Assembly (NCBI GenBank): GCA_044892525.1
Contig: CM097885.1
Coordinates: forward strand, 215,946,001-216,010,000
DNA length: 64,000 nucleotides
Source of the DNA: Schmidtea polychroa
Lineage: Eukaryota
Reading direction: 5' to 3'
Below the pieces are notes generated by a model. That model did not search any database. It was not told the DNA's origin and worked only from the letters and a program-made list of their open reading frames with translations. The first letter of the stretch is position 1, and each line of letters opens with the position of its first letter. Shown piece after piece: positions 4,694 through 61,552 of the stretch. The position numbers and the translations under genes are program-made.

Positions 4694-4922
4694 CTGGGTT
4701 ACAGGTAATCAAACATTTTACCTTTTCGTGCTGTTTCCAGCGTAACCCAGAATACAATGATGATCCTACCAATTGATACCCTATGAGTGACCATCGTTGG
4801 AAATGTATCAACTGGGTGAGTACTCGCAAAAAGTGAGCGCACTACCTGCACTATAATTGTCGGGTACTCTTTGGGTCCACGGACTATCGATAGAAGATGT
4901 ACGTCCGATTTACTCTGGTCCC
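4694..4922 (-). ncRNA. Unassigned conserved structured RNA module, copy A1
   Basis: Minus strand carries GGGACC...GGAC-CTTCTATCG-GTCC...GGACCC, a GAGTAC/GTACTC stem, stem CCAGTTGATAC/GTATCAATTGG with bulge ATTTCCAA (4804-4797), and a terminal GGGTTAC/GTAACCC hairpin. Homologous to the other seven copies. Confidence 0.7.
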
Positions 4923-5063
4923 TTGACACTATTATTTTCCCAAACCTCACAAATTTCCACTCAACCTCATCAAACTAACATGCAACATACTAATGTGAAG
5001 GTACAACAGCTTTATTTACATTCCAATCATCAGAACATCTTATGGTTCTCGAGGTGATTTATG

Positions 5064-5491
5064 TTACGATGATCCGGATTCGACCAAAGGTCCTTGTTCA
5101 GCCAACCGCAGTCGTTTTAATCGTTCTCTCTTATTTCGACATAACCGTTTGCGCATGATCTTGATGGTTTTGGCCCTATGAATTTCGGCTAGCTCTGTGG
5201 ACATTGACCGGATGGCTGCCGTATCATTCTCATCTATAATCCTCTGATTTTAGCGTGTCTCCATTACGCGCATTTGTATTTTCAGCGCTCGAATTTTGGG
5301 CTTGTCTTGAGTAGTTTGGAGCTGCAATTGCTCAATCTGTTTCATGCGTTTATGCATAACCTCAGGGTGAAACCAAGTCCGTTCCATCTCTCTGCATCAC
5401 TCTTTGAACTTAGTGATGTTGTCTTGAAGACGCTCGACTTGTTGTTGGGCCTGTTCTCTGTCTTGTCTGAGATTTTCGAAGAGTTTTAACA
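5064..5491 (-). pseudogene. Decayed coiled-coil/basic ORF-B exon (unassigned family), copy 1
   Basis: After acceptor TTCAG: VLKLFENLRQDREQAQQQVERLQDNITKFKE*CREMERTWFHPEVMHKRMKQ...KIRALKIQMRVMETR*...RKRLCRNKRERLKR. Aligns by eye with 61601-62067 and 46739-47208. Confidence 0.75.
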
Positions 5492-5734
5492 CTGAATTAC
5501 AAAAACAATTAAACGATTCCTTATACGCTATTCTTCTCCCCCGTCTGAAAGCCTTATCAAACTCAACTCTCAATAGATATATAACAGAGGTCGAACCCTT
5601 ATACGTATTCTATATCTTTGCGATTAAAAATATAAAGATAGTTCGATATGATTATTTATAACAATTCTGTTTATTAAGAATGAATACGACATAAGCTACA
5701 GGGTCATGCAATACAAATAAATATGAAGATCACA

Positions 5735-6125
5735 AATCATTGTTTATTGTTATTGTCATCAGAGATCACAAATGTGTTTTCAGCTGCATGGAGCCGTCTT
5801 TCGGGGTCTACCCCGTTTTTCTCGAGTACTGGCTCGACTTAAGCCTCTTTGATAGGTTTGCCGGTTTCGGCCGCACGAATCTGGGCCTGATTCAGCCGGA
5901 GCTCGTGTTACGCGGTCTCTATGGCGCCGATAGCTCGATCTTGAGCGTCCATTAGCCGATTATTATATGGTTCGGTCTTGACCCCCGCCGGGGCGTCAGG
6001 TTCTGGTCCACTACGAATTACGGGACCCCAGTTGTCGAGGTCTTGATCCCGATTCCATGCGTGTATCTTATAACAGACATACCTGGTACGGAGGCGAGTG
6101 ATGGTCTCGTTGTACTGATTATCTT
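5735..6125 (-). pseudogene. Decayed ORF-A (unassigned), upstream of ORF-B
   Basis: GC-rich island reading RLRTRYVCYKIHAWNRDQ...DRAIGAIETA*HELRLNQAQI with three TAA stops. Resembles WLWNRIRAWNDG...HAIARLRRVELDINDGII at 63250-63960. Confidence 0.55.
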
Positions 6126-8459: not shown

Positions 8460-8995
8460 TAATTTTTATTTTTTAATTATTTTTTGTTAAACTTGCCTCC
8501 ATGATGGATTTGAGAATTTCCAGAACACTCCATATTAAATTAAAGTTAATTTTTTTTAAATATTGTTTTCCTAAATTCTTTTCTGGGATTTTTTTTAAAA
8601 CTAATTTATTTAATTTTTTCAACTTCCACTGATTTGAGTAGCTTTTATGATGGATGTCGCCCTATTTTTATGGATTGCTATGGATTTTTGTCTAGAATTT
8701 TGCATTGCTACTATCTTTCGAGTTTATTCGAGTTCGTATTTTGTATTTTTATGTTTCTCTGTTATGTTTGAGTTAATTTTTCTGTAATACTTCTTGCATT
8801 TTGTTGGAGTTTATTTTTAATTTCACTGTTTTTATTTTTTGTTATTTTCCTTTAATTATTATTGTTTATTTGATGTTTTTGTCTTTTAATTTTAACTAAA
8901 CTTATTATTAGGTATGCAAGTTGTGTACCACCACATTTTGCCACCTTTGCAAGATTTTTTGGGTCTAGATATTAGTTCTGGCCCAACATATGGTA
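8460..8995 (+). repeat. AT-rich dispersed repeat family ending TTAGTT(C/T)TGGCCCAACAT(A/G)TGGTAG
   Basis: Terminus matches 22728-22750. Related internal motifs (TCGCCATTAATTC, GATTTTAATCGA) link 22050-22750, 47450-47860 and, inverted, 41270-41760, 34090-34560 and 17190-17290. Start boundary approximate. Confidence 0.5.
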
Positions 8996-9080
8996 GGCGA
9001 TGAACCCAGTGATTTGCCGGCAATTGCTGTTGTAGAGCTCACCTTTTGCCGACAGTCACCCACTAGATCGCAGTTTCAAC

Positions 9081-11579
9081 TAGGGTTTAACAATATTCGG
9101 GTTTCTCAAATATTCGAATATCAAATAATAAATTCTTAAATATTCGAATTATTCGAATATTTCGAATACTTACTTGACTATGTGATAAAAAAATTTTGAA
9201 ATAAAAAAGGAAAATTAAGCAACGATTATTTATAATATTATTTATTAATGAGACTGAAACCAGCTCTTTAAAAATACAATAGCATTAATAGCTTCATCTA
9301 GCATTCTGGTTCTAAGTTTCGATACCACAATTCCAGAAGATGAAAATGCTCGTTCACTCTCGGTTGACGTTGGTTTAACTGTTAGCAGTGCATTATAAAG
9401 TAAATCCAAATTTCGTGATCTTACTCCAGTGGCTTCATAAATTTGGAATTCTTTGTTGAGCGAATTAAAATTATCACCATTAATTGGGATTGAAGGAGCT
9501 TGACTTTTTGTGATTGCTAAATTTAACTCATCGGCAATTGATGTAGGTTCAGGTTCAACACGAATGACTACAATTTCATGGTTTTCTTCACTGTTACTAT
9601 GTTGCACATTAACTTCTTTTAAAAATAATCGTTGTATTAGTTCTTTGTCATATGATAATGTAATGGTTCTAGGTGAATAAGAAAACCATTTGTTGTTTTC
9701 TTTTGATGCTGATAAATTATGCAGAAACCTCAATATTGATACCATTGCTTTATTTCTTCTCTCATTTATACGTTTGAGTAAAATTTCTTGAAATTTTATG
9801 CTTAATTCAGATTCTTCTTCCGCTAACTTATTAAGTAAAAATATAACTATCGTCTCGCAAGTTAATAATGTAGCATCTTTTCGGCTTAGTGCTAGAACCG
9901 CAACTTTTAAAGGAGCTAGAACTGCTAACATATTTTTAAGAGTGGTAATATTGATTTCACAAATTTTATCAAAAGCATTTAATTCAATTAAACTGGTTTT
10001 TATGCAGCTATATAACATTAGAAATCTTTCGATCATTGCTTCAAGAGAATTCCATCTGGTTTTAATATCTCTTATCAAACTTATTTCTTTTTGAAATTCT
10101 TGTTTTACGTATCGCTGTAAAATGCTATTTTTGGTGAGTGACCGTCTAAAGAAATCCACGACCTTTCGAATTTCTGTTATTGCTTTTTGGTAATTGGGTA
10201 GAAGAATAATGCGGTGCTCTTGTTCGGTTTCAATTTCACCAAATATTTCACCATCATCAAATTCATCATATGATTTTGATTCTGAATCTAAAGTATTTGG
10301 ATCACATATTTCTTCTTGATAAATATGTTTCTCGTTATTTTTGTAGAACATATCCATCACAGCTAAATGAATAGCATGATTCATACATTGAACGTGGTGT
10401 GTTGGATTCTCACGCCCAAACTTACACATAACACTTGCACCATCAGTGGTTGATGCAACAATATCTTTTGCAAATGTGATACCAAATTCTTTTAAATGTT
10501 TGTCTACAATTCTTTGAGTTTCTATGGCATCACAACCTCCAATTATTCGAACCATCCCTAAATTGAAAAAAACCGAATCATTACAATGAATATTTATATT
10601 GAAATATCGTTTATTGGCTAGACTTGTCCATTCATCGAGCGTTAGACTGAATCTTTCACTACTTTTTATTCTTACATTTAACCTTTCAATTGTAATATTT
10701 TTTTTGTTTTTTAAAATAAGAAATTAATAAATCCATTACTTTTGCCGGATTTTTGGGTAAAGTATATCCTTTATCAGAAATAGATTGTCTTATAAAAGAA
10801 ATTTTTGTTATTCCATTTACTGTGAAACCATCCTCAGAAACTAATCTTGCTACAATTTCATTAAGTTGTTGTTTTTTCGTGGTAACAAAATTTAAAATAC
10901 TTGAACTGGTACATATTTTTTTTGAATTGAAATTGGAGCTGTCTTCTGTCAAGCGCTTGGCAGTAAGATCCATCATATGTTTCAACTTTAAATGATTTAA
11001 CATGGGAGTTGTAGTAGATCCTTTGCAAGTTACCTTGTGTGGACATTTTGTACAAAAGGCCTCATCTCCATTTCTTTTAAAATACTTCCAAACTTCAGCC
11101 CGATTACTCATTATTTATTAATAAGGACTGAAAAATGTGAAATTTTAAATCCTTAAAAATATTTATACTTAAGTAATTGTTACTATTCTTCCAATATAAC
11201 AAAGTTCCTTTATATTTATATTTTTAGAATATTAAATTAAAATGAAATGTAATTACCTTATATTTTTGTGTTTATACATATATAGATGATTAGATCACGA
11301 TTGAATAAAACAATTGATATTTAAAAAACAATTGATATTTAACTTTTTAACAACGCTAACGGCCTACTATACTACGTACTTTTGAACCAATAAAAAAATA
11401 TTTGAAATTAATTAATAAAATTAGCGACATCTTTTATATTTCTTTTTGTAATTTAAGCTAATTAAAGAACCATTAATTATTCGACGAATAATTTAAGAAA
11501 ATATTCGAATATTGAATATCAAATGTTGTACAGATTATTCGAATAGTATTCGACGAATATATTCGTGTGTTAAACCCTA
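9081..11579 (-). mobile_element. hAT (Ac/hobo-like, BED finger) transposon, near intact
   Basis: Perfect 11-bp TIR TAGGGTTTAAC/GTTAAACCCTA. TSD GTTTCAAC / GTTCCAAC (7/8). Subterminal TATTCGAATA repeats. Confidence 0.95.
9245..11111 (-). pseudogene. BED-finger hAT transposase with one frameshift near 10700
   Basis: BED finger (VWKYF...CTKC...MLNHLKLKH) in 11111-10686. A shifted frame gives FSLTLDEWTS and runs into the 436-aa ORF with TTDGAS, CMNH, TRWNS and TESERAFS. Confidence 0.92.
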
Positions 11580-12478
11580 GTTCCAACGTCGATTTCGACG
11601 GGTGTTTAGTGATCAATTAAAATAGTTATGCGCGGTTGCGGAGGGGATACGGAAATAAGGAAAAGCGTTGGTCAAATAAGCAGTTAAAAGTGAAAGACCT
11701 TCCCCACACGTAATCCACCAATAGTTATGGGAGAAACAAGGGAGAAAAATCGACTAAATATTAAACAATTAATGCAAATTTCATAATTACACGCACTATG
11801 ATTTTACGAAGTAGCAGAAAATACGTAGGTGGACATCACAAATTGGCATAAATACCAAACAAAATTTCTTTATTTCAACTTGTGTGAAAATAGTTTAACT
11901 GTGAAAATTGGTTAAATGATTAAACTGAATTCTATGCACGTTGGGCGGTAGTTTATATTTGGTTAATGCATTTTCTATGTTAATTAAATCTTTTTAATGT
12001 TATTTGTTTTTTTTGTCTTCTGTGAATTTTGTTTATGAGACAGTCGAAAATATGAAATGAGGGCAGACGATTGGTACTCTGTTGTGTGGTAGTGGACAGG
12101 TTTGAAAAGGTCTGGTCATTTCACATCATGTGACATCATTCATGGCCGTTGCCACAGAGAGGTGATCGGAGGTATGATGGGTATCCAGGTAAGATCAAAA
12201 ATTTTCGTTCAATAATAGAATAATTAATCAAACTTATGTCTTGAAATTAGTTAGAATTTAGAATTTCGCTTTGATCGAAATAAGACGATCACAATATTTC
12301 TCATGAATATTCACACAACGAAAACTAGATAATAACGATCATTACAAAAGATCTAAGAATAAATTTTCAAAATGAAAAATGAGGGCAGATCCCTGCTCAA
12401 TATTTTTGAAAGCAACGTTAAATACCACTCAATAATGAGGACCATAACTAAATAATCAAGAAGGAACAATAAGTAAAT

Positions 12479-12581
12479 AAACCTGACTATGTAATAAGTA
12501 TTAATGTAATGAGTAGTAATTCTAGCAGTAGAGCTCACCTCCTGATTCTTGAGCCACTGTGTAAATTACCAACATAGCTAG
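12479..12581 (+). ncRNA. Partial structured RNA module copy D (3'-truncated)
   Basis: AAACCTG...ATGAGTAG...GAGCTCACCTCCTG...ACTGTGTAA ATTACCAA CATAG matches copy B1 and stops just after the bulge. Confidence 0.5.
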
Positions 12582-12856
12582 TAAAAGTAAAATAATCAAA
12601 AAACTCAATATGAAAAAAATGTTTTGAAAACTTATGAAGACCTTATGTGTCAGTGTCTCACTGTCTGTTAAGCTTTAATTACAGTACAACTGGTGGTCTA
12701 GCTGGATTGTTTGAATTTAAGGTAAATTTTATAATTAATCCAATTTCTCTCTATTGGTTAAGTTTTGTGTTAAATTATTATTTCAATATCTAATTCATTG
12801 GTCACTTTTTGTTGTAAACATGCAATACTTAATTACGCATTGTAAGTATTTGAATA

Positions 12857-15182
12857 ATGGACAGGTTACAGATTACAAGGGAAACCAGAGGAAAATCAAA
12901 TGTATATTTGATTGGTTCAACCTTGTCTGACATTCTCGGAGTAAAGTTACCAACATATCACCAAGCTTTTGGTTATTTCATACATCTTCACCAAGATGAC
13001 AATCTGGCAGTACGTGATTCTAGTCGACAAAACGTCGTAAAGGTGTTTGGATTTTAGAATAAGTCCGAATTGGGCAGTCAAACATTCCATCAAAAAATGG
13101 GAAACATTTTTTGTTGAATGGAGTGGTCTACAAAAGCATAAGAATCGGGAAACCAGTGGATACAAGACGAATGTGGATGAATTCATCACACGCCTTGACA
13201 ATCTCTTTGACATTGCTCATTCGGATATCCTCACTTTGATGACTATTCCTCCTCTCAAAGAAAAAAGATCGACCAGGCTCAATGGGGCTCTTGACAAGGT
13301 TGAAGAACTAAAGAGTAAACGTAGTTTGGATCGGAAGGAGGCAGAACTGAAGCATAGGAAGCGATCACAAGAGCAAATTCAAATGATGATGAGGTTGACG
13401 AAGATGAGTTCGCTGATAAAAGCAAAACTTACAGTTAACCAGATGGACCCAAGAGAAATAAAAATCAATTTATTTTCACCTGGTTTAACATCAACTTTCA
13501 TCACTGAATGCTACCTTCGTTCTAAGTGAAGTAGCTTCCAGCCTTGGCCATGATGTAAACACTTTAAACATCAACCGAAGCTCAATACATCGTGCTAGAG
13601 AAAGTCACCGGGCTGCCAGATCTATCGGTTTGTGATCAGAATTTTCATCAACGAACCCTTGAACGGTTCACTGGGACGGAAAGCTGATGGAAGATTTATC
13701 GTCACATTTACATGTAGATCGTCTTCCAGTCCTTATCTCAGGAGTAAAGACATAATTCGAACAGTTACTTAGCATCCCAAAGTTGTCGGCTTGGATAGGT
13801 GAAGCCCAAGCATCCGCAGTCCTTCAATGTTTGGAAGATTGGGATGTCGAAGATCAGGTCGCTGCTCTTTGTTTTTATACGACCACAAATTTTTATACGA
13901 GCACAAATTAATCAAAGATCTTCTATTCCTGGCCTGTCGTCACCACGGTATGGAGCTAATTGTCGGGGCAGTATTTGATATGACTTCAGTTACACTTCAA
14001 CAAGACCAGACATGCCATGATAAATGGTCATGCATAGACTATGGTGGCTTTCAGGTTGCTTCATCGGACCCATCTGTTGAGTTACTAGTTGATCCATATC
14101 GTTCTGATATCCTGAGTTTTGCCAGAACATATTTGCAAGCTGAACAGCCAAGAGATGACTATGTGAATTTTTCGGACTCAGTTCAAGATGACTGCTTCAG
14201 AAGAGCGTGGTATTTGTGATGTCGTCATTTTTCAGCTATCATACACCTTAATGCCTGGATGACTGCACCACTTGCTGTTGAAACACCAATTAAATGACTC
14301 CAAGCTTATGGGACAACTTCTCAACTATCCTCATTTATGCTGCATTTAGGGTATTTATGCTGCAACCAGCAAGAAGCTTGGTCTACATTGTGGTATCTGT
14401 CCGAGGAGATCATTGGTTTGGCCTTGTTTGACTCCAGATTATCGCATGACTCAAAGAGACTGATGATTGCCACGATGTACGAAGAAGCGCTAGATCATCC
14501 ATCGAAGCGACCCAACCTAAAGTCTGATGCATTCCTGGAAAACTCGGTTTGGAGCAGTTCTGTACATCAAACTCCAAGAAACTGTTCCAGTTACATGAAC
14601 GACCCTAAACACTGGTCGGCAAGGATACATCGGACAAGAACAGGATGAGTCATACAAACGAGCACTGGGCATTGTCAAGAGCTTGGGTGTTGTCAACGAC
14701 AGAGCCGAGCGTGGAGTTGCTCTTATTCAAGATTATAACAACAACTTGAGCAAGAATGAAGATCAACACCAGTTTCTTCTTCAAATTGTGAATGAACACA
14801 GGCGATAATTCCCTGACTGTACCAAGCGATTTGTGCTAGTACTGGCGAAAAATTGGACACTGAGAAATAACAGTAACACGGATGAACAGTTAGCAATCTA
14901 GCAGAGACATAATGCTTAACATGTACAGTTGGAGTTCTTTTTGAATCAGTAATATTATTTTATATAGTAAACCGAACTTTTACAGGCAGTTGTGTGTGAA
15001 ATAAATGTGAATTAAACACACAAGAAAACTGTGGCAATTTAAAATTTAAAACTTAAAAACCGAGGGCAACTTCTAAAGATTTTTTGCACAATTCATTATT
15101 TCTATATTTGGCACAGATTGGATTGGTGACAGAGTTGAAATTTTAACTTTCATTTTTTGCTATGTACTAAGGGACACCCTAA
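12857..15182 (+). mobile_element. Decayed hATm-type transposon (3' TIR visible, 5' TIR not found)
   Basis: Fragments GVKLPTY, LDNLFDIAH, VHWDGKL, DRLPVLISG, LACRHH, PRDDY, LWYLSEEIIGLALFD and VVNDRAERGVALI. Ends GGGACACCCTAA at ~15182. Many stops and frameshifts. Confidence 0.85.
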
Positions 15183-16379
15183 TAACTGTTGGGTGACGAG
15201 GGCAAGCCCATCACCACATTCACTCTTAACAAATATTACAAGACGGAGCCTGGAAAGTACATGTGCCGAGAAGATAGTGAGAGGTCAATATTATAAGATC
15301 AATTCAAACCAATCCAAAAGCAATCCAACCCACCTTGTACAGAAACTAACTATCCTTTATATGTATATTACTATCTTTTAAGACAACTGAATATCATTTA
15401 TGTGTAAACTGTACTGACTAACTTTTATCCTTTGTATTCTGTGTATATTAAATTAATTAACTTTCATTTAACAACTGAGTATCTTTTGTGATTTTGTGAT
15501 TTATATTGGTGTATTGTTTTATAAGAAAAATTATATTTTATTACATATTTAACATTCTAATAAAAGAGGATTAAATAAATAAAACATTGATATTAATTAT
15601 TATAAAATTTAAATAAATCAATCACTAATAGTACAATTAATATTAAATACGAGATATTAATAAAATATTATTATTAACACGCAATATAAAATTAATATTC
15701 TAGGCCGGAAACAAATAATGAAAATAATTATATAATAAATATATAACACGCGATTTTATAATTATTAAAAAAATATGTCAATAATTAATATATAATTCCG
15801 TTCGTATAAGCCGGAAATATAATTATTATATTTTAGGGTTATTAATTTAATATAAATGTTAGGGATAGGCCTGCAGCCTGAAACAATAAAACAATAGATA
15901 TTACTCAAAAAAAGTATATTAAAGTAATAAAACAATTACCTAATATAGAAATATATATAATTAAAATACTATAAATAGAAATAATTTATATTTGGTATCA
16001 ACTAGTGTTGCTAATAAATAGTAGTTATAAATTATAAATAAATATAATATAAATAGTGGTTCAAAATGAGAACCAGTGACGCAAAAATTTGTAAGCGAAA
16101 AACGTGACTAAACATAAAGTACTTAGGAATTGAAAAAGCGAAAAGAAGTACACCATTAAAAATAATCAATTGAGAAACAGCTGTAGAAGTATTAAAATCA
16201 AAGTATTTGGGGAAGCTCTAATAGAAATTAAATATCCAACATTTGGAGTTGGAATATGAATTGAAAATCTTACGGTTGAAAAAAAGTTGTGAAATTCAGG
16301 AGATAATTTGAAACCAGAATATCTGCGGAAATTGTTGAAAAAGAAACAGTTGCTATTTTTTCAAGGTAAAAGAAATTTA

Positions 16380-16755
16380 TTGTCGCAATCAAGGTCCGGA
16401 AGGGTCTCTTCCAACGACGCCCGATGTCATCTTCATGGGCACCAATACTTTTACAGTCGACCCCGGTCAAAGTCACTTCCTCACTGACGGTTCCAGCAAT
16501 TTCCAACCCCGTTCCTGCACAGTCAACTGCCGGAAGCGTAAGCGCCTCATTCGTGTGGAGCGCTCAAAGAAACGCCGGGACAAAACCGCATTGTTCGCTG
16601 TCCCAAACCCTGAAAGAAAGAACTCCACATCCAATCCAGTCCTGTCCAGTACTCCTCAATATCGGATAATACCTGCTGCTAATTCGACGTCGTTCTCTGA
16701 TCCACAACTAGAGATGGATATCGCAGCTATGCTGAGAGAACATGTTGAATTTTGA
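16380..16755 (+). pseudogene. Low-complexity basic ORF-C terminal exon (unassigned), copy 1
   Basis: CRNQGPE..TTPDVIFMGT...RKRKRLIRVERSKKRRD...QYRIIPAANS...LEMDIAAML aligns with 40043-40483. Confidence 0.65.
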
Positions 16756-16938
16756 TAAATAAACTGCATCGATGATTGCCCAAGGACCGTTTATGATCTG
16801 ATTCACTAGTTGTTTTGCTCTGTGAGTGTGTCGGTTCTACAGACATGCTATATAGTTTGTTAGTTGAGAATGCATTGTCATTACTACTCCTAATATAATT
16901 TTGTATCTTTTGACAGTCTGGCCAAAGAAGACAGGAAA

Positions 16939-17182
16939 GATGTAAGCCCTTCTATCGGCATTCTAGAACCCGAAAGTTGAGTATCATGAGTAGTCCTAAC
17001 ACATGAGCTCACCTGCTCATAAACTCCAACCCGTGTGTACATTACCAACATGAGCGACCTCATGGGTACACATGAGGGGGTAAAAGTTATAAATCATAAC
17101 GGGCGTTTGGGAAGGAGTCTTTCTCTGAGACAACAAATCATTGCCCTTAGCAACCACCATCACGACGCACCCCTAAGCGCTC
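16939..17182 (+). ncRNA. Structured RNA module copy B1
   Basis: GATGTAAGCCCTTCTATCGGCA..GAACCCG. Stems GAGT/ACTC and ATGAGTAG/CTGCTCAT. CGTGTGTAC ATTACCAA CATGAG CGAC CTCATG G GTACACATG at 17032-17074. Terminal GGGCGTTTGGG/CCCTAAGCGCTC. Confidence 0.75.
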
Positions 17183-17524
17183 AACAATAAATAAAAACCC
17201 AGATCAGACAAAAACGATATATACATCGATTTAACAATCTAAGATACATAGCACGCACTACATAGGATATAACAAAAAAAATTTTTCAAGCAATTATGAA
17301 TTTAAATCTGAAGAGATAGTCAATTGAAAAAATCCAAGCTATTGTCAATCAGAAATTTTATCATTGGTAAATTTTGGTATTCAATAAATATTTATAGACT
17401 CATATTCTCTTTATTTACATAGGAACCAGTAAAGTTGAGAATTTCAAATATTGAGAACTCAACATAATTATCCATATGAAATCTAGGAATTTTGACCTTT
17501 ACCGGTATTAATTTGAAATTTTTA

Positions 17525-40042: not shown

Positions 40043-40483
40043 ATGTGTTTCCAGTTCATCATCGGACCGTCTAGATCATTATGTAACAATCATGGCCCCG
40101 AGATATTTCCTACTGCAACCCCTGACATCGTTTTCCTGGGAACCAGTCAGATGCAGCCGACACTCACTGGTACTTCCAGACCATCAAATGTTCCAGCGAA
40201 CTCCGACAGCGTTCCAACTCAACCAAATCCACGAAAAAAGAAAAAACGGTTAACCCGGGCGGAAAGATCCAAGAAACGTCGTGACGAGATCTCGGCCCTG
40301 GAAGCGACTCTGTTTGCCGTCTCTGAGGTCAGTAAAATCCAACCGCCGCATGCTCCGGTGGCACCAATTGCCACCCAATATCGATCGATTCCAGCAGTTA
40401 ATTCTAGGGCTGTTAATGATTCATACCTGGAATCTGACATCGCCGCCATGTTAGCCGAGGGCGAAATGCAGACGGCGAATTGA
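40043..40483 (+). CDS. ORF-C terminal exon (unassigned, basic NLS-like tract), copy 2
   Basis: 146-aa open frame CNNHGPE..TATPDIVFLGT...RKKKKRLTRAERSKKRRD...LESDIAAML, homologous to 16380-16755. Preceded by small exon-like segments at ~39330-40040. Confidence 0.65.
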   Translation: MCFQFIIGPSRSLCNNHGPEIFPTATPDIVFLGTSQMQPTLTGTSRPSNVPANSDSVPTQPNPRKKKKRLTRAERSKKRRDEISALEATLFAVSEVSKIQPPHAPVAPIATQYRSIPAVNSRAVNDSYLESDIAAMLAEGEMQTAN

Positions 40484-40775
40484 CCAATATTTACTCGAGA
40501 CTGTTGTAGTTACTCGGTTCCAATTACAGTTGTCGCAAATTTCAAAGATTGTGTGAACTGATTCAATGATGTTTCTAACTTCTATATATCTAGATTTGTA
40601 ATACTTCTAATATAATTGTGTATCAGATGCTTTCTTTCGTTGCGTTTTGTTGCGTGATGTATAATCATAGAACAGTTTGTTAGAGAGTCACGTAGGTGTA
40701 ATAAACTTTTAGAGACGACCTAACTTGAATCATGGGTGTCGTATAGTCGAAAAGGGATCAGATAAGAAAGAAAAA

Positions 40776-41017
40776 GATGTAAGTCCTAACGGCAATCAGG
40801 AACCCGAATGATGAATATCGGTAGGAGTAGTACTAACATAGGGGCTCACCTGCTTACGAATTCCAACCCATGTGTACAGTACCAACATGATTCCTTATCA
40901 TGGGTACACATGCGGGAGAATACTGTCAAACCATATTGGGCGTTTAGGAAGGAGTCCTCCATAGCACAATCGTCATCATTCCTAGTAACTGCCTTTGAAA
41001 CACACCCTTAGGCGCCC
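40776..41017 (+). ncRNA. Structured RNA module copy B2
   Basis: CTAACGGCA..GAACCCG. Stem GAAT/ATTC (compensatory to GAGT/ACTC in B1). CATGTGTAC AGTACCAA CATGAT TCCTT ATCATG G GTACACATG at 40869-40912. Terminal GGGCGTTTAGG/CTTAGGCGCCC. Confidence 0.75.
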
Positions 41018-42984
41018 AACATTTAGCTACTGTTTTGGGTACTTGTATTAGTTGTATATACCTACATAGTAGAATTATTCGTGGGACATATTTTAAACAT
41101 CACTGGGCCACTTATTCGTCAATAGTTGAGTTATCTTTTGATAGCTCAAAGTATTTTGAATATCTTTCGCTAGATTTGTTTTTGCTTCAAAGGCCCATTT
41201 TAATCTTTAATCCAAAATACTTTTAAATGGAGCTTCATTATAGTTCTTCCTGCCTCTCGTTCAAGTGTTGGACAAAAAGTGATTTAGGCCCACGTATAGT
41301 TAGCGTGATGGAATGAGTCGGAAAATAGGACGCAGGCACAAATACCGAATAAAGTTAAACTCAAGACACGTCAAAACATCGATTAAAATCCACTAAACAG
41401 AATTCATTTGACACCAAAATGACAAACACAAAACTAAAGAAGAATAAAATAGGAAAATAAGTATTTCACGAAACGAACTGAAACATAACATAAACACATC
41501 AGAAAAAAATTTGAATTAATGGCGATAATAGAAAGTAGCAGCGGAAATTAGAAAGATTTCGACAAAAAAACACCAAAAAATGAATTAGGAATAATAATTT
41601 CAATAAAAATAATAAAAGCTAGAATATTCTATAAAAATGGCGAAATTCATCATAGCTGCCAAGTAGCTAATTGAAACAAACTAAAAGATAAAATATTTGT
41701 GAATTAAATTATCAAAAAACTAAAATCAGAATTAAAATAAATAGGTTAGGGTGATTGTACTATTCTTGAAACGCTTCCAAAATCTGATCGAAAGCCGTCA
41801 CTTGGTCACTAGGCATTTACACGCCGGCGATTCGTCTTGCCTTTATATCACTAATAGGCTGATTTACTCTGATTTAGTAATCTCTTGTGCTTTTATTTGG
41901 ATTGTGTTGTGTGCGCGCTGTTTATAACATATTTCATAAATATCAAGACATTTTTTAATAATGTATTTAGACGAAGAATTGAGAGTACTTATACCAAATA
42001 TCGCTGAAATCTGCAAATGCCGACAAGCGGATGTATTACATTAAATGATTTTCGCATCAAGTAAATTCCATTCGAGTATATATATTTCAAATGATTTAAA
42101 AGCAATGAATTTGCAAAAATTATTTTAATGTATTAATAAATATATTTTACTTAATATTTTCATAAATTATAATGCAATAATGAACCTGGATCAGATGGTC
42201 ATTACTGTATACAATTATTAAAATTTGATATTTTAATTGCAGGAAATACAATATTTACACCGTTAATAACACCAACCAAATTATAATTATAAATTTGTCT
42301 GGATCAAATAATTAATTGAAATAAATGTAATGCAATTAACAAAAAAATGAAACAAAACATTAAAATAGTATTATTGCTAATAGAATTATAATTAGTATGT
42401 TATATGCAAGGAATTATTATTATATGTGATTATATTTCAACAAATTCTAACTTTTACTTGTAAAGTTGAAGAATTTCTAGAATTTTCTGAGTGAGATTCA
42501 CTAGACAACTCATCATTAAAATTTATTAATAAATCCAACTTACAGTTTAGTTTTGGATAAATTTGATGATCCTCGTTTATAATGACTTGGCATAACAACT
42601 CTTAATTAACACTTAAATACGTTTAAATAAAATCATTCATTTTTCTAAAATTAATATATGACTAATACACAATATCATAAATAATATTCAATTATTATTA
42701 AAATACTATAGAAAAAATAAAGTGCAAGAAATTAGACGTGGTATATTTAAGAATATTAAAACAATGCAGATTCCAGAGTAATTTTAATTATTTAAAATAT
42801 TTTAATTAAGATAATTATTTCACTTTCAATTTAATATCGAAATATTTTAATTAAAGTACTGAAAGACTAAATATATAAAAGCACAAATTATAAAATATAT
42901 TTATATTATAACATTAAATTTCAAAAAAAATGTGCTTAAATATTTTTATAACATTTTTATTGATTAAGTTTTGTTTCATTTTTG

Positions 42985-43226
42985 GAACGTCACTATAGAT
43001 TTAAAAGTGACAGTTTATACTGGTACTTATAGATGTTGAATCGACTCCTTCATAAACGTCTACATGATTATTGTACTTTATGCCATCTGGGCATCCATGG
43101 TGATAACCAAGTTGGTGCTGTACACAATGTTTGAAAATCCATGAGCAGGTGAGGTCTATCCCTAAAACTACTCCTCATGATATTTTTATTTTCGGGTTCT
43201 GGACTGCCGATAGAAGGTCTTACGTC
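42985..43226 (-). ncRNA. Structured RNA module copy F
   Basis: GACGTAAGACCTTCTATCGGCAGTCCAGAACCCGAAA...GAGTAG...CTCACCTGCTCAT...TGTGTAC AGCACCAA CTTGGT TATC ACCATG G...GACGTTTATGAAGGAGTC. Confidence 0.7.
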
Positions 43227-43635
43227 ATTTTTATTCTTTTGCGACTGTTGCTCGATTTTTGTCATATGATCGTTTAATTGTGGTCCACATTTCTGGATGT
43301 TTACTATTGTTCTTTTTCTAAAGTTTCGCGCAGGAATTCACCCATATTTCCCGGTTAATAAATGTTATTTTATTATTCTATGCAATACCTGCGAATATTC
43401 AACCTATCTTTCAAATATGTTAGAAGATGGAAGAACGTTAAAAACTTTGAAACTCAAATACTATATAATAGGAACAAACAGGTACAGAGTAAATATGCAT
43501 GTGGACAATAGTCAATGATGATGATATCTATGCGATGAAAAGAATAAACATTATTGTTATAACTTATTATTAACAATTTGATTTATATTGATTTATTCTT
43601 GATGACATTATAATAAATTTGTATTGTTGTTATTG

Positions 43636-45800: not shown

Positions 45801-46453
45801 GAAAATTGAATTGGATCTTAGTGAACTGTGATAATACTCAACTTTATAACTACGTACTATTAGGCATTTTTAGGCACTTTATTTTGTATTTTTGGTGCAT
45901 AATCATGGATTTTGATTCAACTGGGTGCGGTTTTTATGTTATGTATTTTCGACACATTAAAACAAACTCTCAATCCTTGATTATAGCCCAACACTTTGAA
46001 GTCTTCAGCTATCAACATTAATTCGACAAATCTTTCGGTTTCCTTTACGAAATCTTCAACATAGGTTTACATTTCTAAATTTTTCTGTACCATATTAGAT
46101 GTTTGATTTCTTGATTTAATAACATCCATAATATTTCAAAACAAAACAAAACTATATTTTTAAACACAAAACAAAATGTCTCTTATTTAAACAATCTCTG
46201 TTTTTAGCTTTGAGGATATTTTCGCACGCATGAGTTAATAATTGAATATTTGTACACAAGCATTCAATAGATATTTTATATTTTAATTTTCAATCATTCT
46301 TAAATATATTTAATTTACCGTCAAACAATTTAATAATTTCGACATTCACATTTAATTGATTATTTTAATTTATAATTTATAATCTACATTTATTAAATTA
46401 TTTAAATCTATTTAAAACTGGAAATTAAATAATAATTCTGTTTAATTACTTTC

Positions 46454-46678
46454 ACACAGGTAATACAGATACTAACCTTTTCTGATGATTCCAGCTCAAC
46501 CCAAGATACAAGATACCCAAGATATGTCACACGATAACCGTAAAGTACTCAAAGTTGGTACTGTACCGCATTTGAGAAAGGAAAAGGAGCGTACTTCTAT
46601 GCATTATAATTGGCAAGTGTTCAAAAAGGTTTGTAGACTGCCGATAGAATGCTTTGTGCCCGACTTTTGTCTGGTCCC
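46454..46678 (-). ncRNA. Structured RNA module copy E (decayed)
   Basis: GGGACCAGAC...TTCTATCGGCAGTC..AAACC...TAC AGTACCAA C...GGGTTGAGCTGGAATC..GAAAAGG...ATTACCTGT parallels copies A1 and A2. Confidence 0.65.
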
Positions 46679-46738
46679 AACTATTTTGAATCTGACAGAA
46701 GAGTGTATAAGTCAATGGATTTCGGTCCAAACATGTAT

Positions 46739-47208
46739 TTAAATAAAACAAATTGAACTCGATCCCGACAACCATGGCATGCAATCTGAGCCTTTCTTTC
46801 TGGTTGTCGTCTTGCTAGTTCCTTTTTTCCCGGTTTACATCTTCCGACTGAAAAATAGATTTTGCCTTTAGTTCAAACACTCTCTGATGAGTTGGGTCGG
46901 CTGGAAAGAGCTTTAATGGTGGTCAGGACAGTACTATCTTGGTGAAAGACTCATTTATGTCGATTTGTCTCTCTTCGGTCTCCAGGTGTCGTATCTTGAG
47001 CTTTAAGACCTTAATTTCTTCTTGATCCAGAACGTCTTGCACCTGTAAATAAGCGACCATTATCTTTTGTTTATAAGGCTTGAGTGAAACTACGCGTATT
47101 CCATTTATTTGCAGTTAAGTTTTGAGTGATCAGCCCTTTAGAGATGCATTTCCATTTGTTTTTTAGTCTCAATTAGGTTAGTGCAAAATCCTTCGAAAAT
47201 TCGTTCTA
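46739..47208 (-). pseudogene. Decayed ORF-B exon, copy 3
   Basis: Same acceptor phase (TTCAG|T). VERIFEGF...CK*MEYA*FHS (cf. CREMERTWFHP) and IKVLKLKIRHLET (cf. IRALKIQMRVMET). Confidence 0.65.
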
Positions 47209-53534: not shown

Positions 53535-53715
53535 TACATTATTAAAAAATATTTGACTATGAATCAGTAAAGAATATCTATATTTCTTTTGATATTCACG
53601 AATTTTCAGCACAGCCTTTTTGAAAATCACCTGAAAAAGGCTGTGCCGAAAATTCATGAACATAAAAAAAATATCGATATCTTTACTGATTCATAGTAAA
53701 ATATTTTATAATAAA
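53535..53715. repeat. Foldback palindrome made of two Tc1-like TIR arms
   Basis: ~80-bp inverted arms around 53625-53635, same family as the 26893 and 30153 arms. Another partial arm at ~31620-31680. Confidence 0.75.
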
Positions 53716-53772
53716 TACACTGTCAATTGAAAAGAAATCAGAGGTGAAAATTGAAAAGTTTTTATAATATAT

Positions 53773-56230: not shown

Positions 56231-56239
56231 TAATAAATT

Positions 56240-57334: not shown

Positions 57335-57992
57335 TAACATTTTCATTAAAAATCATTAAAACTAACACGATATTTTCAAATATATATTTATTATAAAATC
57401 TGAATATTTAAACAATATATAAATTTAAATATCATCACTTTGATAATATAAAAGTTTACAAATTATTAATATTTTTTTTAGTTTTTTAAAAATATTTTTA
57501 AAAAAATTGGACGAATCTTCCGGCCACCATGAAACGATGAAAATAAACAAACTACATTTTACTAGTGTTAAATTGCAATTTCTAAATGTATATTGTTATT
57601 AAGATATTTTTTATGGTACCTACAATTTAGGAAATGCTACTCATAACATTATCAAATATATTATTGTTGCATGTAAAAGATGAAAAACAAATTATGCAAA
57701 AGCGCCCCGTAGCGAAAGGGTTAAAGTTATTTCAAAAGTTAGTGAAAGATCAAGTGCTGAAATAAGCACACTATAAATAATTTTTGATGACCGATTTAGT
57801 GAAATTATTTTGTTGACATTTTTATCTCATCCAAACATCAAATATGATAAAGATGTGTTCATATAAGGGGATGTAAAATTTAGATACATAACAATATAAA
57901 TTCTGGGCAACAATGAGCCGAAAATCGAGTTTATTATAATATTTTTATATTTCATATAAGGAATTTTATGAGTAAATTGAAAATGGATTTAC

Positions 57993-59024
57993 CTGTAACT
58001 TAGAAACTGACGTAAAAATTGTCATGCAATAAAAACAAGTTAAATTCATAGGTATCTTGCCAATAAATAATTTCTTTTTGATGATGAACTCTCTCCGCAA
58101 CATCAATTCTAGAGTGTGACTATTAAAAATATGTTCATTCAACTGTGGCACATTGGGCACCTCAAATCCACAAAGTTTACATGCTATTTTCATATCATTC
58201 CTGTAACTAAATGAAACAGACAAATCTTCCTTTTGAGCATTTTCGGCAAAAGATTTTATTTGAATATATCCATGAAAACATAATGTATGGATGGTCAATT
58301 GAAACAAATCGACTATATTTTCACAACTACTCAAAGCATCTTTATTGAGGGTAGGTTTGTAGTAAAATAAGGCGCAAGTATATTTGACGCCATCACTTTT
58401 AGGTTTTTTATTTGAGGTCTCAGACAATTTATAATACAGAAGATTAAGTTCTGGTCCATGTTCATCAACCGCATGGACTTCATGGACATTGACATCGGAT
58501 GATTGAAATTGAGCGCTACATAAACTGCATCTTTTTGGATGTTTTAATGGACTATGCCGGATCACTAGATGTATTTGGAGGGCAGCTTGAGAACTAAAGA
58601 TCTTGATTTTTTTGCATAAAATGCAAATCAAAGGACAATAAGAATTGTTATACATTTCAATTAATTCCTTCAATTTTGCCACCTCTGTTAAAAAGCATCT
58701 ATGCTCATTTACAGTTGAAACTCGAATTTCCTGGTTACAGAATTTACAGGAAATTAACTGTTCCAAATGCAGTTTCGCTGCCTCCTCTTCCGACAACGAC
58801 GGAGCGTTATGAATGAATGAGGCCATATGAGAGTGCCATTGGACTAAATCTGAAAATTCCATATGACAAAATACACAGTAATTTGAAGATTTCTGAACAA
58901 TATGCGGGTTCCATATATGCGTAATGGACTTTTTCTCATTTTTAAAATAATTTGTAAAGTTAATGTTTTCAGCAATTTGAGAAAAGTATGGAAAACCTGA
59001 CACGTCCTCCTGATTACTATACAT
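57993..59024 (-). CDS. Multi-C2H2 zinc-finger protein, large exon
   Basis: Uninterrupted frame with several CxxC...H...H motifs (CVFC..H..H, CILC..H..H, CSLC..H..H, CKLC..H..H, CFYC). Donor CAG|GTAAAT at 57993/57992. 5' boundary uncertain. Confidence 0.85.
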
Positions 59025-61320
59025 ACTTAAGTTTTTATGAAAATATTATAATCAATATATTTTTAAAGTAATAATTGATAATTAGAAAATGATTATACAC
59101 CAATCTCTCGCTTAATAAAAATTATTTTTACAAAGTTTCGTCATAACGTTATTTCAAAATTAATCCAAAGTCTCGGTTTATGTAATAAAATTTCAATTTA
59201 CGAACAATTTTTCGTTATCGAATTAATTAATAAAGTTTTTATTGATTATTGAATCCTGCCAATTTAATTTACCCACTCCTAACCGGCCCTCTGTCGAGTT
59301 CGCTTCAACTTCCTTTGATAATTGTCTAATTAGTCGGGTCTCAGTACGCTCCGGGATTTCCATTAGCGATTAATTAATTTTTAATTCATTTGTTTTTGCT
59401 TTATAACTTTTTATGGGGATTCCGTAATAAATTTCTGGGCTCGTCTTTTGATTTGACGTTCAACCATACACACTTCCACAGATCAATATTAATTTTCAAT
59501 TAATTTTTGAACTATTAGTATTTTGATTTTTTTAATGATTTTTATTATGCTTCCGTTTTATTTTATGACTATATATATTACCCCAACATTACTTAGACCT
59601 TTGAGGGTTTATCCATGATGGGTGAGAATTTTCAAAGGATCAAAATATTTTATCACTTAAGATTTCATAACACTTCATAATCTATATGTCCACTGAAAGG
59701 GGAAGCAATGATCATAATTTATTTTACCATAGATTCTTCTAATTTTTCCAAGTATTGATTTTTGATAGTAGCCATAGTTCTATTTAGATATTGAATATTT
59801 TCATGTACTTCGGCCCGAATTATTATTTTAGTAAAGTTTCTTGTCATATCATTTGAAAACAGCTACACCCAATTCCGAAATTGAGTAACCTCTATAATTC
59901 ACGTTGGTGTGCACACCAGTTGAGTGAGTCACCATTTACGTGAAAATGAAGTTACTCAATTTCATTTATTCAATTTATTAAAAATGGTTTTCAGGTAATT
60001 TTTTTAATTTCAAGTATATTTTAAGACTTGAATTTTGATTTTATATAATTATGAGATCATTATTCAAGTTCTTAAATATTACTGTTAGTCATCATTTATA
60101 ATTTATCATTTATAAATATAATTTAATTCAATTTCAGGTGTTTTTTAGGAAATTTATGATATTTTATGCATTAATATGGATTTATTTCGTTAAAATGTAA
60201 GTTAGATATTTTTATATTTATAAATAAATAAAGTAATCACCAAACACATTTATTTTTTAAGACATTTAGGAAAAAATCGGCGTACATGAACGAAATAATT
60301 TTTTAAATTTTTATAATCTTCTTTCTGCAGCTCATTTTCGATGGCTTTTTTCTTTCTGTAAATCAAAATATCTCGAAGGTTTTCAATATGTGAAATGCTG
60401 CCTTCCCACATACTATAAAATATTTTAATATTTTGTAATTTAATGAATAAAACTTACATTGTATTTTCTTCTTTTTCCCTAAAGCTCAAGGTAGAGCTGT
60501 CGGAATCTAAATTAAAAGTATTTTCTTGCATTTTTTAATAATTTTAAAATAATTATATTTTAACAATATGTTAACAGTTATTTATTTCGGAACAAAAACC
60601 TATATAAGAATTTTGCATGCATTTTTCATTATGGGTTTTGTGTTGGTGTGTTCAGTTATTTTTCTCTCACCTTCACAAAACCTATAATAAAGTTACTAAA
60701 TTTTGGAACAATAAATTTCTACACACAGGTAAGTTTGTGTGTTCCTATAATATATATTTATTGATTTTTTTTAGATTATAGAAGTTATTAAATTTCGGAA
60801 TTAGGTGTACTTCATTCAATTGATGAGATCACATATACTACTCAAACCCACCTCAATAACAACGTCTGTCATCCTGTTATAATAGTTTACTCCTGCCTAC
60901 GCCCTCCAACATATTTAATTCACTTTCACGCTAGAGAAATTTTGTGATAAAATGACTCGAAAAATTTCTATATTGTTTTATAAATTTATTAAAATACTAA
61001 ATTAAGACTTCTTAAATTTATGAAATTCATAAATTGGTAAAATTTTGATTCTTTAAAAATCCCAAAACAATTGATAAGATTAAAGTTTTTGAAAATTTCT
61101 GAGAATTCTTCCAATATAATTTCCATGGAAACGCCAAAAATTTATTTATAATTGAAAAATTTAAATTTCTAAAAATTTGGTTGTTTATTCGCACCAACGC
61201 ACTCACATTGATAGTGAAATTTCCAAATTTTGGTAAAATTATTTTACTATAATTTTATAATAATCAAATTTCTACTTTCAGGAGAACAATTCCTGGGGAG
61301 ACTTAATTCCCTATTACGGT

Positions 61321-61552
61321 GGGGTTACAGGTAGATCACATTTTATCTTTCGGACTGTTTCCAGTGTAACCCAGAATACAAATATGTTGCTATATTGCTT
61401 GATATCCGTTGAGTGAACAACGTTGGAACTGCTTCAAAGGGGCGAGTACCAGTGAAAGGTGAGCATACCTGTCTATACTATAATCAGTAAGTACTCAAGC
61501 GGGTTCGCGGTCTGCCGTTAGAAATCATGTGTCCAACTTTAATTTAGGTCCC
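61321..61552 (-). ncRNA. Structured RNA module copy A2
   Basis: GGGACC...TTCTAACGGCAG..GAACCCG. GAGTAC/GTACTC around GCTCACCTTT. Bulge AGTTCCAA with upper stem CGTTG/CAACG. Terminal GGGTTAC/GTAACCC. Confidence 0.75.

What the first reader, a model, noticed from the sequence alone, without database searches (positions are those of the whole stretch)
4694..61552. Eight copies of an unassigned ~240-nt structured RNA module with covarying stems
Seen: copies at 4694-4922(-), 9002-11716(+), 12479-12581(+, partial), 16939-17182(+), 40776-41017(+), 42985-43226(-), 46454-46678(-) and 61321-61552(-) share a common order of motifs. These are a 5' hairpin with CT(T/C)CTA(T/A)CGGCA, then AACCC, a stem enclosing CTCACC, a stem-bulge-stem, and a long terminal hairpin (GGGTTAC/GTAACCC or GGGCGTT/GGCGCCC). 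Primary sequence diverges strongly while pairing is kept, e.g. GAGT/ACTC to GAAT/ATTC. Most non-Watson-Crick pairs read as G-U on the strand co-oriented with the upstream ORF, implying function as RNA on that strand. Established: such covariation marks functional RNA. The module matches no ribozyme, snRNA or intron core I can recognise. Inference: it is a cis-acting 3' RNA signal (replication/RT recognition, cleavage, stability or packaging) of an undescribed mobile element or endogenous virus family.
Basis: partly seen in the sequence, partly recalled or inferred. Interest (0 to 1): 0.92.

Follow-up and report, generated by a model that had tools for sequence, protein, structure and literature searches.

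The report
Structured 3' tail of small repeats
A 240-base non-coding module, repeated eight times in this AT-rich animal genome window, is the conserved and partly base-paired 3' end of a family of roughly 1-kb interspersed repeats, while the large "upstream ORFs" nearby belong to unrelated hAT DNA transposons.

Summary
The eight copies are real. Profile searches recover six full copies, one fragment, and one copy split by a 2.5-kb hAT transposon. They form two subfamilies, 41-49% identical between them and 56-71% identical within each.

One domain, a stem/8-nt internal loop/stem, shows clear covariation. It is 86.9% paired against 65.9% in shuffles (0 of 500 shuffles reach it). Ten of 14 pairs change on both sides, and there are ten G-U pairs against two A-C. 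A second hairpin and the terminal helix have weaker support. The 5' hairpin and the "stem enclosing CTCACC" are not established. Whole-module folding energies are unremarkable.

No Rfam family matches, and no relatives were found in metagenome or viral collections.

The large upstream ORFs are hAT transposases (Hermes fold, terminal inverted repeats, 8-bp target duplication). They are nested or neighbouring insertions, not part of the module's element.

The real unit is about 0.8-1.0 kb: a small lineage-specific ORF, a spacer and the module, ending just after the terminal hairpin. It has no inverted or long terminal repeats, no poly(A), no target duplication and no reverse transcriptase.

My best reading is a sense-strand cis RNA tail of non-autonomous retroposons. 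That mechanism is inferred, not shown. Interest is moderate.

The parts
4694..4934 (-). Module copy C (A-type), complete
   Evidence: nhmmer E 3.8e-54. It has the best-folding terminal three-way hairpin, z -4.75.
8992..9080 (+). Module copy 2, 5' piece, ending in the conserved internal loop
   Evidence: The A-type HMM hits 8992-9086 at E 3.7e-4. Sequence read. The piece was analysed apart from its 3' piece.
11580..11716 (+). Module copy 2, 3' piece: inner stem, 3' strand of the outer stem and the terminal hairpin
   Evidence: CM R1 gives a partial hit at 11567-11612. Inner stem is 6/6 paired. Terminal helix folds.
12509..12577 (+). B-type fragment, middle of the module only
   Evidence: nhmmer E 1.9e-8 with the B-type seed.
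16927..17186 (+). Module copy B (B-type), complete
40763..41021 (+). Module copy A (B-type), complete, downstream of the only intact small ORF
42990..43239 (-). Module copy E (B-type), decayed. No demonstrable homology upstream; an assembly gap lies 396 nt upstream.
46451..46689 (-). Module copy F (A-type), with a decayed or truncated terminal helix
61312..61563 (-). Module copy D (A-type), complete
17030..17076 (+). P3 domain in copy B: 9-bp outer stem, 8-nt 5' internal loop with a 1-nt 3' side, and a 5-6-bp inner stem. The same domain lies at 40867-40914(+), 43084-43130(-), 4769-4815(-), 61395-61441(-) and 46527-46573(-).
   Evidence: Alignment A7. Pair counts. CM R1 scores 46-55 bits for all six copies.
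40043..40483 (+). Small ORF of the B-type unit (146 codons, intact)
   Evidence: It is 39% identical in amino acids to 16339-16752. Differences by codon position are 63/54/92 of 135, with pS 0.80 and pN 0.43. No homologues found.
16339..16752 (+). Homologous small ORF of the second B-type unit. It is open for 138 codons, has no start codon at the aligned position and ends at the same stop.
5067..5609 (-). A-type small ORF remnant (coiled-coil-like with a basic tail), broken by two in-frame stops
61604..62098 (-). A-type small ORF remnant, broken by one in-frame stop
   Evidence: It is 36% identical over 97 aa to the copy-C remnant.
46684..47114 (-). A-type small ORF remnant, broken by at least one frameshift and several stops
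   Evidence: The similarity was judged by eye only.
37024..39265 (+). NOT part of the module family: a nested hAT DNA transposon with inverted termini of about 140 nt and a perfect 8-bp target duplication (37016-37023 and 39266-39273)
   Evidence: The Artemia relative L002 has the same termini.
37259..38963 (+). hAT transposase gene of that insertion. It is broken by one frameshift and lacks the N-terminal part present in relatives.
   Evidence: Over 1,200 homologues, up to 78% identity. A model of a relative hits Hermes transposase with prob 1.0 and E 2e-5. No Pfam hit.
12854..15180 (+). NOT part of the module family: a decayed second hAT copy upstream of unit B. Its transposase is broken at least nine times by a mix of stops and frameshifts.
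   Evidence: A candidate right terminus was found.
9081..11579 (-). NOT part of the module family: a third hAT transposon, with its ORF at 9245-10555(-). It is inserted in the internal loop of module copy 2 and has an 8-bp duplication with one mismatch.
   Evidence: Dimer_Tnp_hAT at E 6e-7. Junctions read.

Best explanation
The module is the conserved, non-coding 3'-terminal segment of a family of short interspersed repeats. Each unit is about 0.8-1.0 kb and consists of a small lineage-specific ORF, a spacer of 50-280 nt and the 240-nt module. Two subfamilies carry ORFs with no demonstrable relationship but share the module.

The module most likely works as RNA on the sense strand. Its conserved single-stranded blocks are presented by a scaffold made of a stem/internal-loop/stem domain and a terminal branched hairpin at the very 3' end. 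The most likely mechanism is that this tail is the recognition and priming signal for a reverse transcriptase supplied in trans. This is how SINEs and other non-autonomous retroposons borrow the structured 3' tail of a 'stringent' LINE.

Shown: the copies, their limits, selection on the module, covariation in one domain, and strand bias. Inferred: that the module is transcribed, that copying goes through RNA, and that an RT-encoding partner exists elsewhere in the genome.
For: - Eight copies in 64 kb, on both strands and in unrelated flanks.
- Homology between copies ends at or within about 4 nt of the terminal hairpin.
- Module identity is 71-77% between two units whose adjacent ORF has saturated synonymous sites (pS 0.80) and is 57% identical at the DNA level, so the module itself is under constraint.
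- The ORF shows a third-codon-position excess of changes (63/54/92), so the units evolved as functional entities.
- P3 covariation is significant against shuffles and slid controls.
- P3 shows G-U 10-14 against A-C 2. All four differences between the two B-type terminal helices pass through G-U on the sense strand.
- The A and B subfamilies share the module (HMM E about 1e-4, collinear) but not their ORFs (hhalign prob 3.5%).
- The units have no TIRs and no terminal direct repeats.
- Copies have different 5' extents: about 250 nt for copy E, 780 nt for copy D, and 870 to over 1000 nt for the rest.
Against: - There is no reverse transcriptase or endonuclease in the window. Pfam scans of 40 open stretches, 35 from the window, found only hAT and zinc-finger domains.
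- No other element in the window carries the P3 motif.
- No target-site duplications, poly(A) or terminal microsatellite were found.
- Four or five units are of similar length, which fits a defined 5' end better than random 5' truncation.
- Whole-module folding is not better than shuffles, nor better than the antisense strand.
- Only seven partly related sequences are available, so covariation statistics rest on few independent events.
- No transcription data are available.
Confidence: 0.42

Rival explanations
1. The units are members (mostly pseudogenes) of a multicopy gene family spread by DNA-level duplication. The module is a conserved 3'-UTR element for stability, localisation or translation control. 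It is not a transposition signal.
For: - The small ORF evolved under purifying selection.
- Unit 5' limits sit at pyrimidine-rich stretches ending in AG, which look like splice acceptors, so the unit could be a terminal exon.
- No TSD, poly(A) or RT was found.
Against: - Eight copies in 64 kb lie on both strands in unrelated flanks, most of them decayed.
- Two ORFs with no demonstrable relationship share the module.
- No shared upstream exons were detected.
- Homology ends exactly at the hairpin, which is typical of an element terminus.
- The ORF has no homologue anywhere.
Confidence: 0.2
2. The units are endogenised copies of a small RNA replicon or virus. The module is its 3' cis-replication element and the small basic ORF is a structural protein.
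For: - A structured 3' end without poly(A), ending in C/A-rich letters just after a hairpin.
- A small basic ORF with no cellular homologues.
- Modules shared between ORFs with no demonstrable relationship resemble modular viral genomes.
Against: - The copy density is that of a transposable element.
- No relative of the ORF or of the motif pattern was found in IMG/VR, and the metagenome scan gave only chance matches.
- There is no polymerase gene.
Confidence: 0.1
3. The structure acts at the DNA level. It would be a single-stranded DNA terminal hairpin of a rolling-circle (Helitron-like) or other DNA element without terminal inverted repeats.
For: - There is a terminal hairpin at the very 3' end and no TIRs or TSDs.
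- G-T wobble is also tolerated in single-stranded DNA.
Against: - There is no CTRR-type terminus 10-12 nt after a short hairpin, and no A/T host dinucleotide pattern at the ends.
- The structured region is 240 nt with several domains, much more than a Helitron end.
- There is no Rep/helicase gene in the window.
Confidence: 0.07
4. One reading: the module is the 3' signal of the element that encodes the large co-oriented upstream ORFs.
For: Two loci show the same order: large ORF, small ORF, module.
Against: - The large ORF is a hAT transposase with a Hermes fold.
- In one locus it sits in a transposon with its own inverted termini and a perfect 8-bp target duplication, ending about 770 nt upstream of the unit.
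- Relatives in Artemia and in two metagenome contigs have no small ORF and no module downstream.
- A-type units have no such ORF.
Confidence: 0.03
5. There is no functional structure. The copies are simply related repeats, and the helices are chance or inherited palindromes.
For: - Whole-module MFE z-scores are weak and the antisense strand folds equally well.
- RNAalifold is weak on all six copies.
- There are few independent sequences.
Against: - P3 exceeds all 500 shuffles and all slid registers, with 10 of 14 pairs doubly changed.
- The split copy keeps both P3 stems with yet other letters.
- The module is more conserved than adjacent coding sequence.
Confidence: 0.08

Closest known systems
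Structured 3' tails shared by 'stringent' LINEs and their SINEs (L2/CR1-type, for example the eel UnaL2/UnaSINE1 pair) - from general knowledge
   Same: A conserved stem-loop-bearing 3' end is shared between elements whose bodies show no detectable similarity. There is no need for poly(A), copies have variable 5' extent, and function is on the sense RNA.
   Different: The module here is 240 nt with several domains rather than a hairpin of about 60 nt. There are no terminal short tandem repeats. No RT-bearing partner and no target duplications were found in the window. The non-autonomous units carry a small ORF rather than a pol III head.
R2 retrotransposon 3' UTR (a structured RNA of about 250 nt bound by the R2 protein; Rfam RF00524) - from general knowledge
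   Same: Similar size, multi-helix fold, location at the extreme 3' end, no poly(A), and primary sequence diverging while helices are kept.
   Different: There is no Rfam match even at E<=5-10. The flanks are not rDNA. No RT ORF lies upstream.
ORF1-only non-autonomous LINE derivatives (HAL1-type) - from general knowledge
   Same: A short unit with one small, basic or coiled-coil-like ORF followed by a LINE-like tail.
   Different: No similarity to any LINE ORF1 family in Pfam. The ORFs of the two subfamilies show no detectable similarity to each other.
Helitron 3' terminal hairpin
   Same: A hairpin next to the 3' terminus, with no TIRs and no TSD.
   Different: There is no CTRR end, the structured region is much larger, and there is no Rep/helicase gene.
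hAT transposons (Hermes, Ac, hobo). This comparison applies only to the neighbouring or nested elements, not to the module.
   Same: Hermes-like fold, termini starting TAG/CAG, and an 8-bp target duplication.
   Different: The transposase family has no Pfam hit at all. It has long (140-320 nt) imperfect inverted termini.

Membership tests
LINE-dependent non-autonomous retroposon (SINE-like, stringent tail) | An RT-encoding partner element carries the same 3' tail | tested here: not met
   No RT was found in the window. CM R1 finds the P3 motif only in the known copies. The rest of the genome was not available.
LINE-dependent non-autonomous retroposon (SINE-like, stringent tail) | Target-site duplications flank the copies | tested here: not met
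   No direct repeat of 12 nt or more links the 3' flank and the upstream region in five copies. The copies are old, so the test is weak.
LINE-dependent non-autonomous retroposon (SINE-like, stringent tail) | Common 3' end with variable 5' truncation | tested here: inconclusive
   The 3' ends coincide. The 5' extents are about 250, 780, 870, 900, 915 or more, and 1000 or more nt. Most cluster near 0.9 kb.
LINE-dependent non-autonomous retroposon (SINE-like, stringent tail) | Poly(A) or a short tandem repeat at the 3' terminus | tested here: not met
   Read directly.
Structured functional RNA (general) | Covariation beyond what relatedness explains | tested here: met
   This holds for the P3 domain only. 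The hairpin ending in the GCTCAC block is at 11/1000 and the 5' hairpin is not significant.
Structured functional RNA (general) | Folding energy below shuffled sequence, and strand-specific | tested here: not met
   Whole-module z-scores are -1.6, +0.5, -3.1 and -0.65. The antisense strand folds equally well or better. Only the G-U/A-C counts favour the sense strand.
Any Rfam 15 family (ribozymes, R2 element, UnaL2, snRNA and others) | A covariance-model match | tested here: not met
   Gathering thresholds were applied to the whole window. E<=5-10 was applied to four module/unit regions. Only chance-level snoRNA and miRNA matches appeared.
LTR element (module as the LTR) | Two direct copies flank an internal region, and solo copies lack the ORF | tested here: not met
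   There is no second copy or terminal direct repeat upstream of the units. Five of the six full copies are preceded by their subfamily's ORF.
TIR DNA transposon / MITE | Terminal inverted repeats | tested here: not met
   The inverted match of the terminal 45 nt is not above shuffles in five units.
Helitron | A 5'-TC...CTRR-3' structure with a short hairpin 10-12 nt before the end, inserted at an AT dinucleotide | tested here: not met
   Ends were read. There is no CTRR and no consistent A/T flank.
hAT superfamily (for the element at 37024-39265) | RNase-H-like transposase with the hAT fold | tested here: met
   Foldseek returns Hermes chains at ranks 1-12, with prob 1.0 and E 2e-5 to 1e-3.
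hAT superfamily (for the element at 37024-39265) | Terminal inverted repeats and an 8-bp target-site duplication | tested here: met
   The same termini occur in the Artemia locus L002.
Endogenous viral element | Protein or nucleotide relatives among viral sequences | tested here: not met
   No match in IMG/VR by motif pattern or by ORF profile. The ORF has no match in 1.8 billion representative proteins.

The most novel reading that the evidence does not exclude
The units could be an undescribed kind of small mobile element. It would be about 0.9 kb, with a single orphan ORF (a basic and/or coiled-coil-like nucleic-acid-binding protein) and a 240-nt multi-domain 3' RNA that serves as its replication or reverse-transcription signal. 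The RNA module would be exchangeable between lineages with unrelated ORFs. The module would then be a new RNA family with a conserved protein-binding internal loop.
Probability: 0.2. Interest if true: 0.65.

Novelty: new variant of a known kind. Interest (0 to 1): 0.42.

Why it matters
If the reading is right, this adds a well-defined structured RNA motif that is not in Rfam. It also adds an unclassified, very abundant repeat family (one copy per 8 kb here) to the annotation of a poorly described AT-rich invertebrate genome.

The P3 domain offers a concrete handle, a conserved 8-nt internal loop held between two covarying stems. It could be used to find the enzyme or partner element that copies these units.

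The work also corrects the annotation. The conspicuous ORFs next to the modules are hAT transposases of a widespread family with no Pfam hit. That family has close relatives in crustaceans and aphids.

Tried and rejected
- Rfam at gathering threshold on the whole window, and at E<=5-10 on four regions: no family found.
- A short degenerate motif pattern scanned against JGI metagenomes gave 13 hits. All were chance, because none matches the module HMM. The same pattern gave 0 hits in IMG/VR.
- Searches with the small ORF found nothing: word-index search, full HMMER profile search of 1.84 billion representatives, IMG/VR and Pfam.
- Pfam on 40 open stretches (35 from the window, around all copies, and 5 full-length hAT relatives) found no RT, endonuclease, integrase or Rep domain.
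- Protein coding by the module itself was rejected. Stops occur in every frame, and no frame is shared between copies.
- An LTR reading and a TIR reading were both rejected.
- A TSD search found nothing convincing.
- Shared upstream exons or longer elements were sought and not found. There is no similarity among the GC-rich islands upstream of the units.
- Homology between the A-type and B-type ORFs is not supported.
- Structure-aware MAFFT (Q-INS-i and X-INS-i) is not installed. A whole-module covariance model was not built, because I expected its size to exceed the calibration limit and a long typed structure string was avoided.
- An ungapped 9-mer test of the terminal helix was significant in only one copy.
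- Possible alternative pairing of the first conserved 5' block with the 5' strand of the terminal helix was seen, but it has no covariation support.
- Organism identification failed. Exact look-ups and a homologue search with a zinc-finger ORF found nothing. Literature searches gave nothing relevant.

Full report
SETTING. The window is AT-rich, with 22-30% G+C in the background and G+C-richer islands of 35-48%. It carries one Rfam match above threshold, a mir-753-type hairpin at 60017-60078. From memory this is a planarian miRNA family, so the host is probably a flatworm, but I could not confirm the organism. Three assembly gaps exist as stated. None lies inside a module copy or its ORF. The nearest gap (43636-43818) is 396 nt upstream of copy E and only limits how far that copy can be followed.

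ARE THE COPIES REAL? Yes.
- Self-BLAST links 16936-17119 with 40773-40956 (77%) and 4696-4857 with 61322-61484 (75%).
- An HMM of six copies recovers all six at E<=1e-49 and a fragment at 12512-12577.
That transposon has its own inverted termini and an 8-bp duplication with one mismatch. I analysed the two pieces apart and never joined them.
- The copies fall into a B-type (16927, 40763, 42990) and an A-type (4694, 61312, 46451, and the split copy).
- Identity is 59-71% within B, 56-68% within A, and only 41-49% between the types.
- The A/B relationship is distant but real. An HMM seeded with A-type copies alone finds B-type copies in the right register at E 1.7e-4 to 1.3e-3. 41 of 291 columns are invariant.
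- The module is not coding, because stops occur in all frames and no frame is shared.

IS IT STRUCTURED? Partly shown.
- Whole-module tests are unimpressive. MFE z-scores are -1.6, +0.5, -3.1 and -0.65. The antisense strand folds as well or better. RNAalifold on a MAFFT alignment of all six gives -5.2 kcal/mol. Part of this weakness is misalignment, since a one-column gap shifts one strand of the main helix.
- I therefore tested helices whose two strands are fixed by invariant sequence anchors, which leaves no freedom to choose the register.
- The stem / 8-nt internal loop / stem domain (P3; 17030-17076 and its equivalents) aligns with only a single one-column gap. It is 86.9% paired against 65.9% in column shuffles (0/500) and 26-48% when one strand is slid by 1-3 columns. 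Ten of 14 pairs change on both sides.
- The split copy keeps the inner stem (6/6) and most of the outer stem, again with different letters.
- Non-Watson-Crick cells are G-U 10 and A-C 2 in six copies, or 14 and 2 with the split copy. Folded on the antisense strand, the domain would be 77% instead of 87% paired.
- One outer-stem position is G-U or U-G in six of seven copies.
- A hairpin whose 3' strand ends in the conserved GCTCAC block is 83% paired (11/1000 shuffles). The 5' hairpin is 83% paired but does not exceed shuffles.
- The terminal helix folds in five of seven copies, with domain z-scores from -4.75 to +1.24. Its letters differ completely between A and B. The four differences between the two good B-type copies all pass through G-U on the sense strand.

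WHAT IS UPSTREAM?
- The large ORFs are not the module's genes. The 391-codon open stretch has over 1,200 homologues of 500-670 residues in crustaceans (up to 78% identity in Artemia franciscana), copepods, aphids and metagenomes.
- That family has no Pfam hit and no PDB sequence match. An AlphaFold model of a full-length relative (pLDDT 78) hits Hermes transposase chains at ranks 1-12, with probability 1.0.
- In the window this gene sits in an element, 37024-39265, with inverted termini of about 140 nt that begin TAG/CAG. The element is flanked by a perfect 8-bp duplication.
- The Artemia locus has the same termini. Neither it nor two metagenome loci has the small ORF or the module downstream.
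- The element is thus a hAT DNA transposon inserted about 770 nt upstream of unit A. Its transposase has one frameshift and lacks the N-terminal part.
- A second, much more decayed hAT copy (12854-15180, at least nine stops and frameshifts) lies upstream of unit B.
- With three hAT copies in 64 kb, I read this repeated neighbourhood as coincidence.

THE REAL UNIT.
- Homology between units A and B covers only about 40026-41021 and 16316-17186. That span is a small ORF, a 280-nt spacer and the module.
- The ORF is intact in A (146 codons) and open in B. The two are 39% identical, end at the same stop, and differ mostly at third codon positions (63/54/92; pS 0.80, pN 0.43). It was therefore a real coding sequence.
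- The module next to it stayed 71-77% identical, so it was under direct constraint.
- A-type units carry a different ORF, coiled-coil-like with a basic tail. All three remnants are broken: two stops, one stop, and a frameshift plus stops. It shows no demonstrable homology to the B-type ORF.
- G+C-rich islands and alignments put unit lengths at about 780 to over 1000 nt, and copy E has only about 250 nt of demonstrable homology.
- The units have no inverted or direct terminal repeats, no convincing target duplication and no poly(A). Homology ends at or within about 4 nt of the terminal hairpin.
- No RT, endonuclease, integrase or Rep domain was found anywhere in the window. The P3 motif occurs only in the known copies.
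- The small ORF has no relative in 5.8 billion clustered or 1.84 billion representative proteins, nor in IMG/VR. The motif pattern finds nothing real in JGI metagenomes or IMG/VR.

INTERPRETATION.
- The data show a conserved, sense-strand, partly base-paired non-coding tail. It is shared by two lineages of short, abundant repeats whose ORFs have no demonstrable relationship.
- The closest analogy is the structured 3' tail by which non-autonomous retroposons are recognised by the reverse transcriptase of a 'stringent' LINE, or the R2 3' UTR. I put about 0.4 on that mechanism.
- It fits the shared-tail-with-different-bodies pattern, the exact common 3' end, the lack of TIRs and LTRs, and the strand bias.
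- It lacks its key witnesses: a partner with RT, target duplications, and transcripts.

NOVELTY AND SCORE.
- Structured 3' tails of repeats are a known kind of feature. This one is unmatched in Rfam, unusually large, and attached to orphan small ORFs. I rate it a new variant of a known kind, with moderate interest (0.42).
- The evidence base is eight old copies from one window.

Noticed in passing
window 60017-60078 (+): A hairpin matches Rfam mir-753 above the gathering score (67.5 against 62 bits, E 2e-13). It is the only Rfam hit in the window and hints at a flatworm host.
   Followed up: partly
window 37024-39265; L002 4196-7378: A hAT transposon family whose transposase has no Pfam hit. 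It is 77-78% identical in protein to copies in Artemia franciscana and has similar inverted termini, which suggests possible horizontal transfer between distant animals.
   Followed up: partly
window 36184-36814 and 36814-37444: A perfect 631-bp tandem duplication spans the left junction of the nested hAT (target duplication, terminus and start of the gene). It is either a very recent duplication or an assembly artefact.
   Followed up: no
window 9081-11579: A third hAT element (ORF 9245-10555 on the minus strand, Dimer_Tnp_hAT) landed exactly in the conserved internal loop of module copy 2. Its 8-bp duplication has one mismatch.
   Followed up: yes
window 26886-27034, 30014-30160, 31579-31717, 53539-53727: A family of roughly 100-180-nt inverted or palindromic repeats (76-86% identity) that looks like a MITE. 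Two members flank a 3-kb segment.
   Followed up: no
window 52644-52981 and 60460-60812; 51219-51310 and 60230-60323: Another dispersed repeat family (75-77% identity), unrelated to the module.
   Followed up: no
window 3378-4154 (+) and 1856-2143 (-): Two open stretches that are 45% identical over 80 residues, on opposite strands and with no Pfam hit. This is probably another repeat-encoded protein.
   Followed up: no
window 57966-59024 (-): A 352-codon ORF with weak C2H2 zinc-finger matches and no homologue in the 5.8-billion-protein collection.
   Followed up: partly
for example window 16967-16972 versus 17101-17106; 4872-4877 versus 4741-4747: The first conserved single-stranded block of the module is complementary to the 5' strand of the terminal helix in most copies. 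This could be an alternative, mutually exclusive pairing, but it has no covariation support.
   Followed up: partly
window 45349-45490: A 71-nt AT-rich tandem repeat, with related copies elsewhere (8450, 22173).
   Followed up: no
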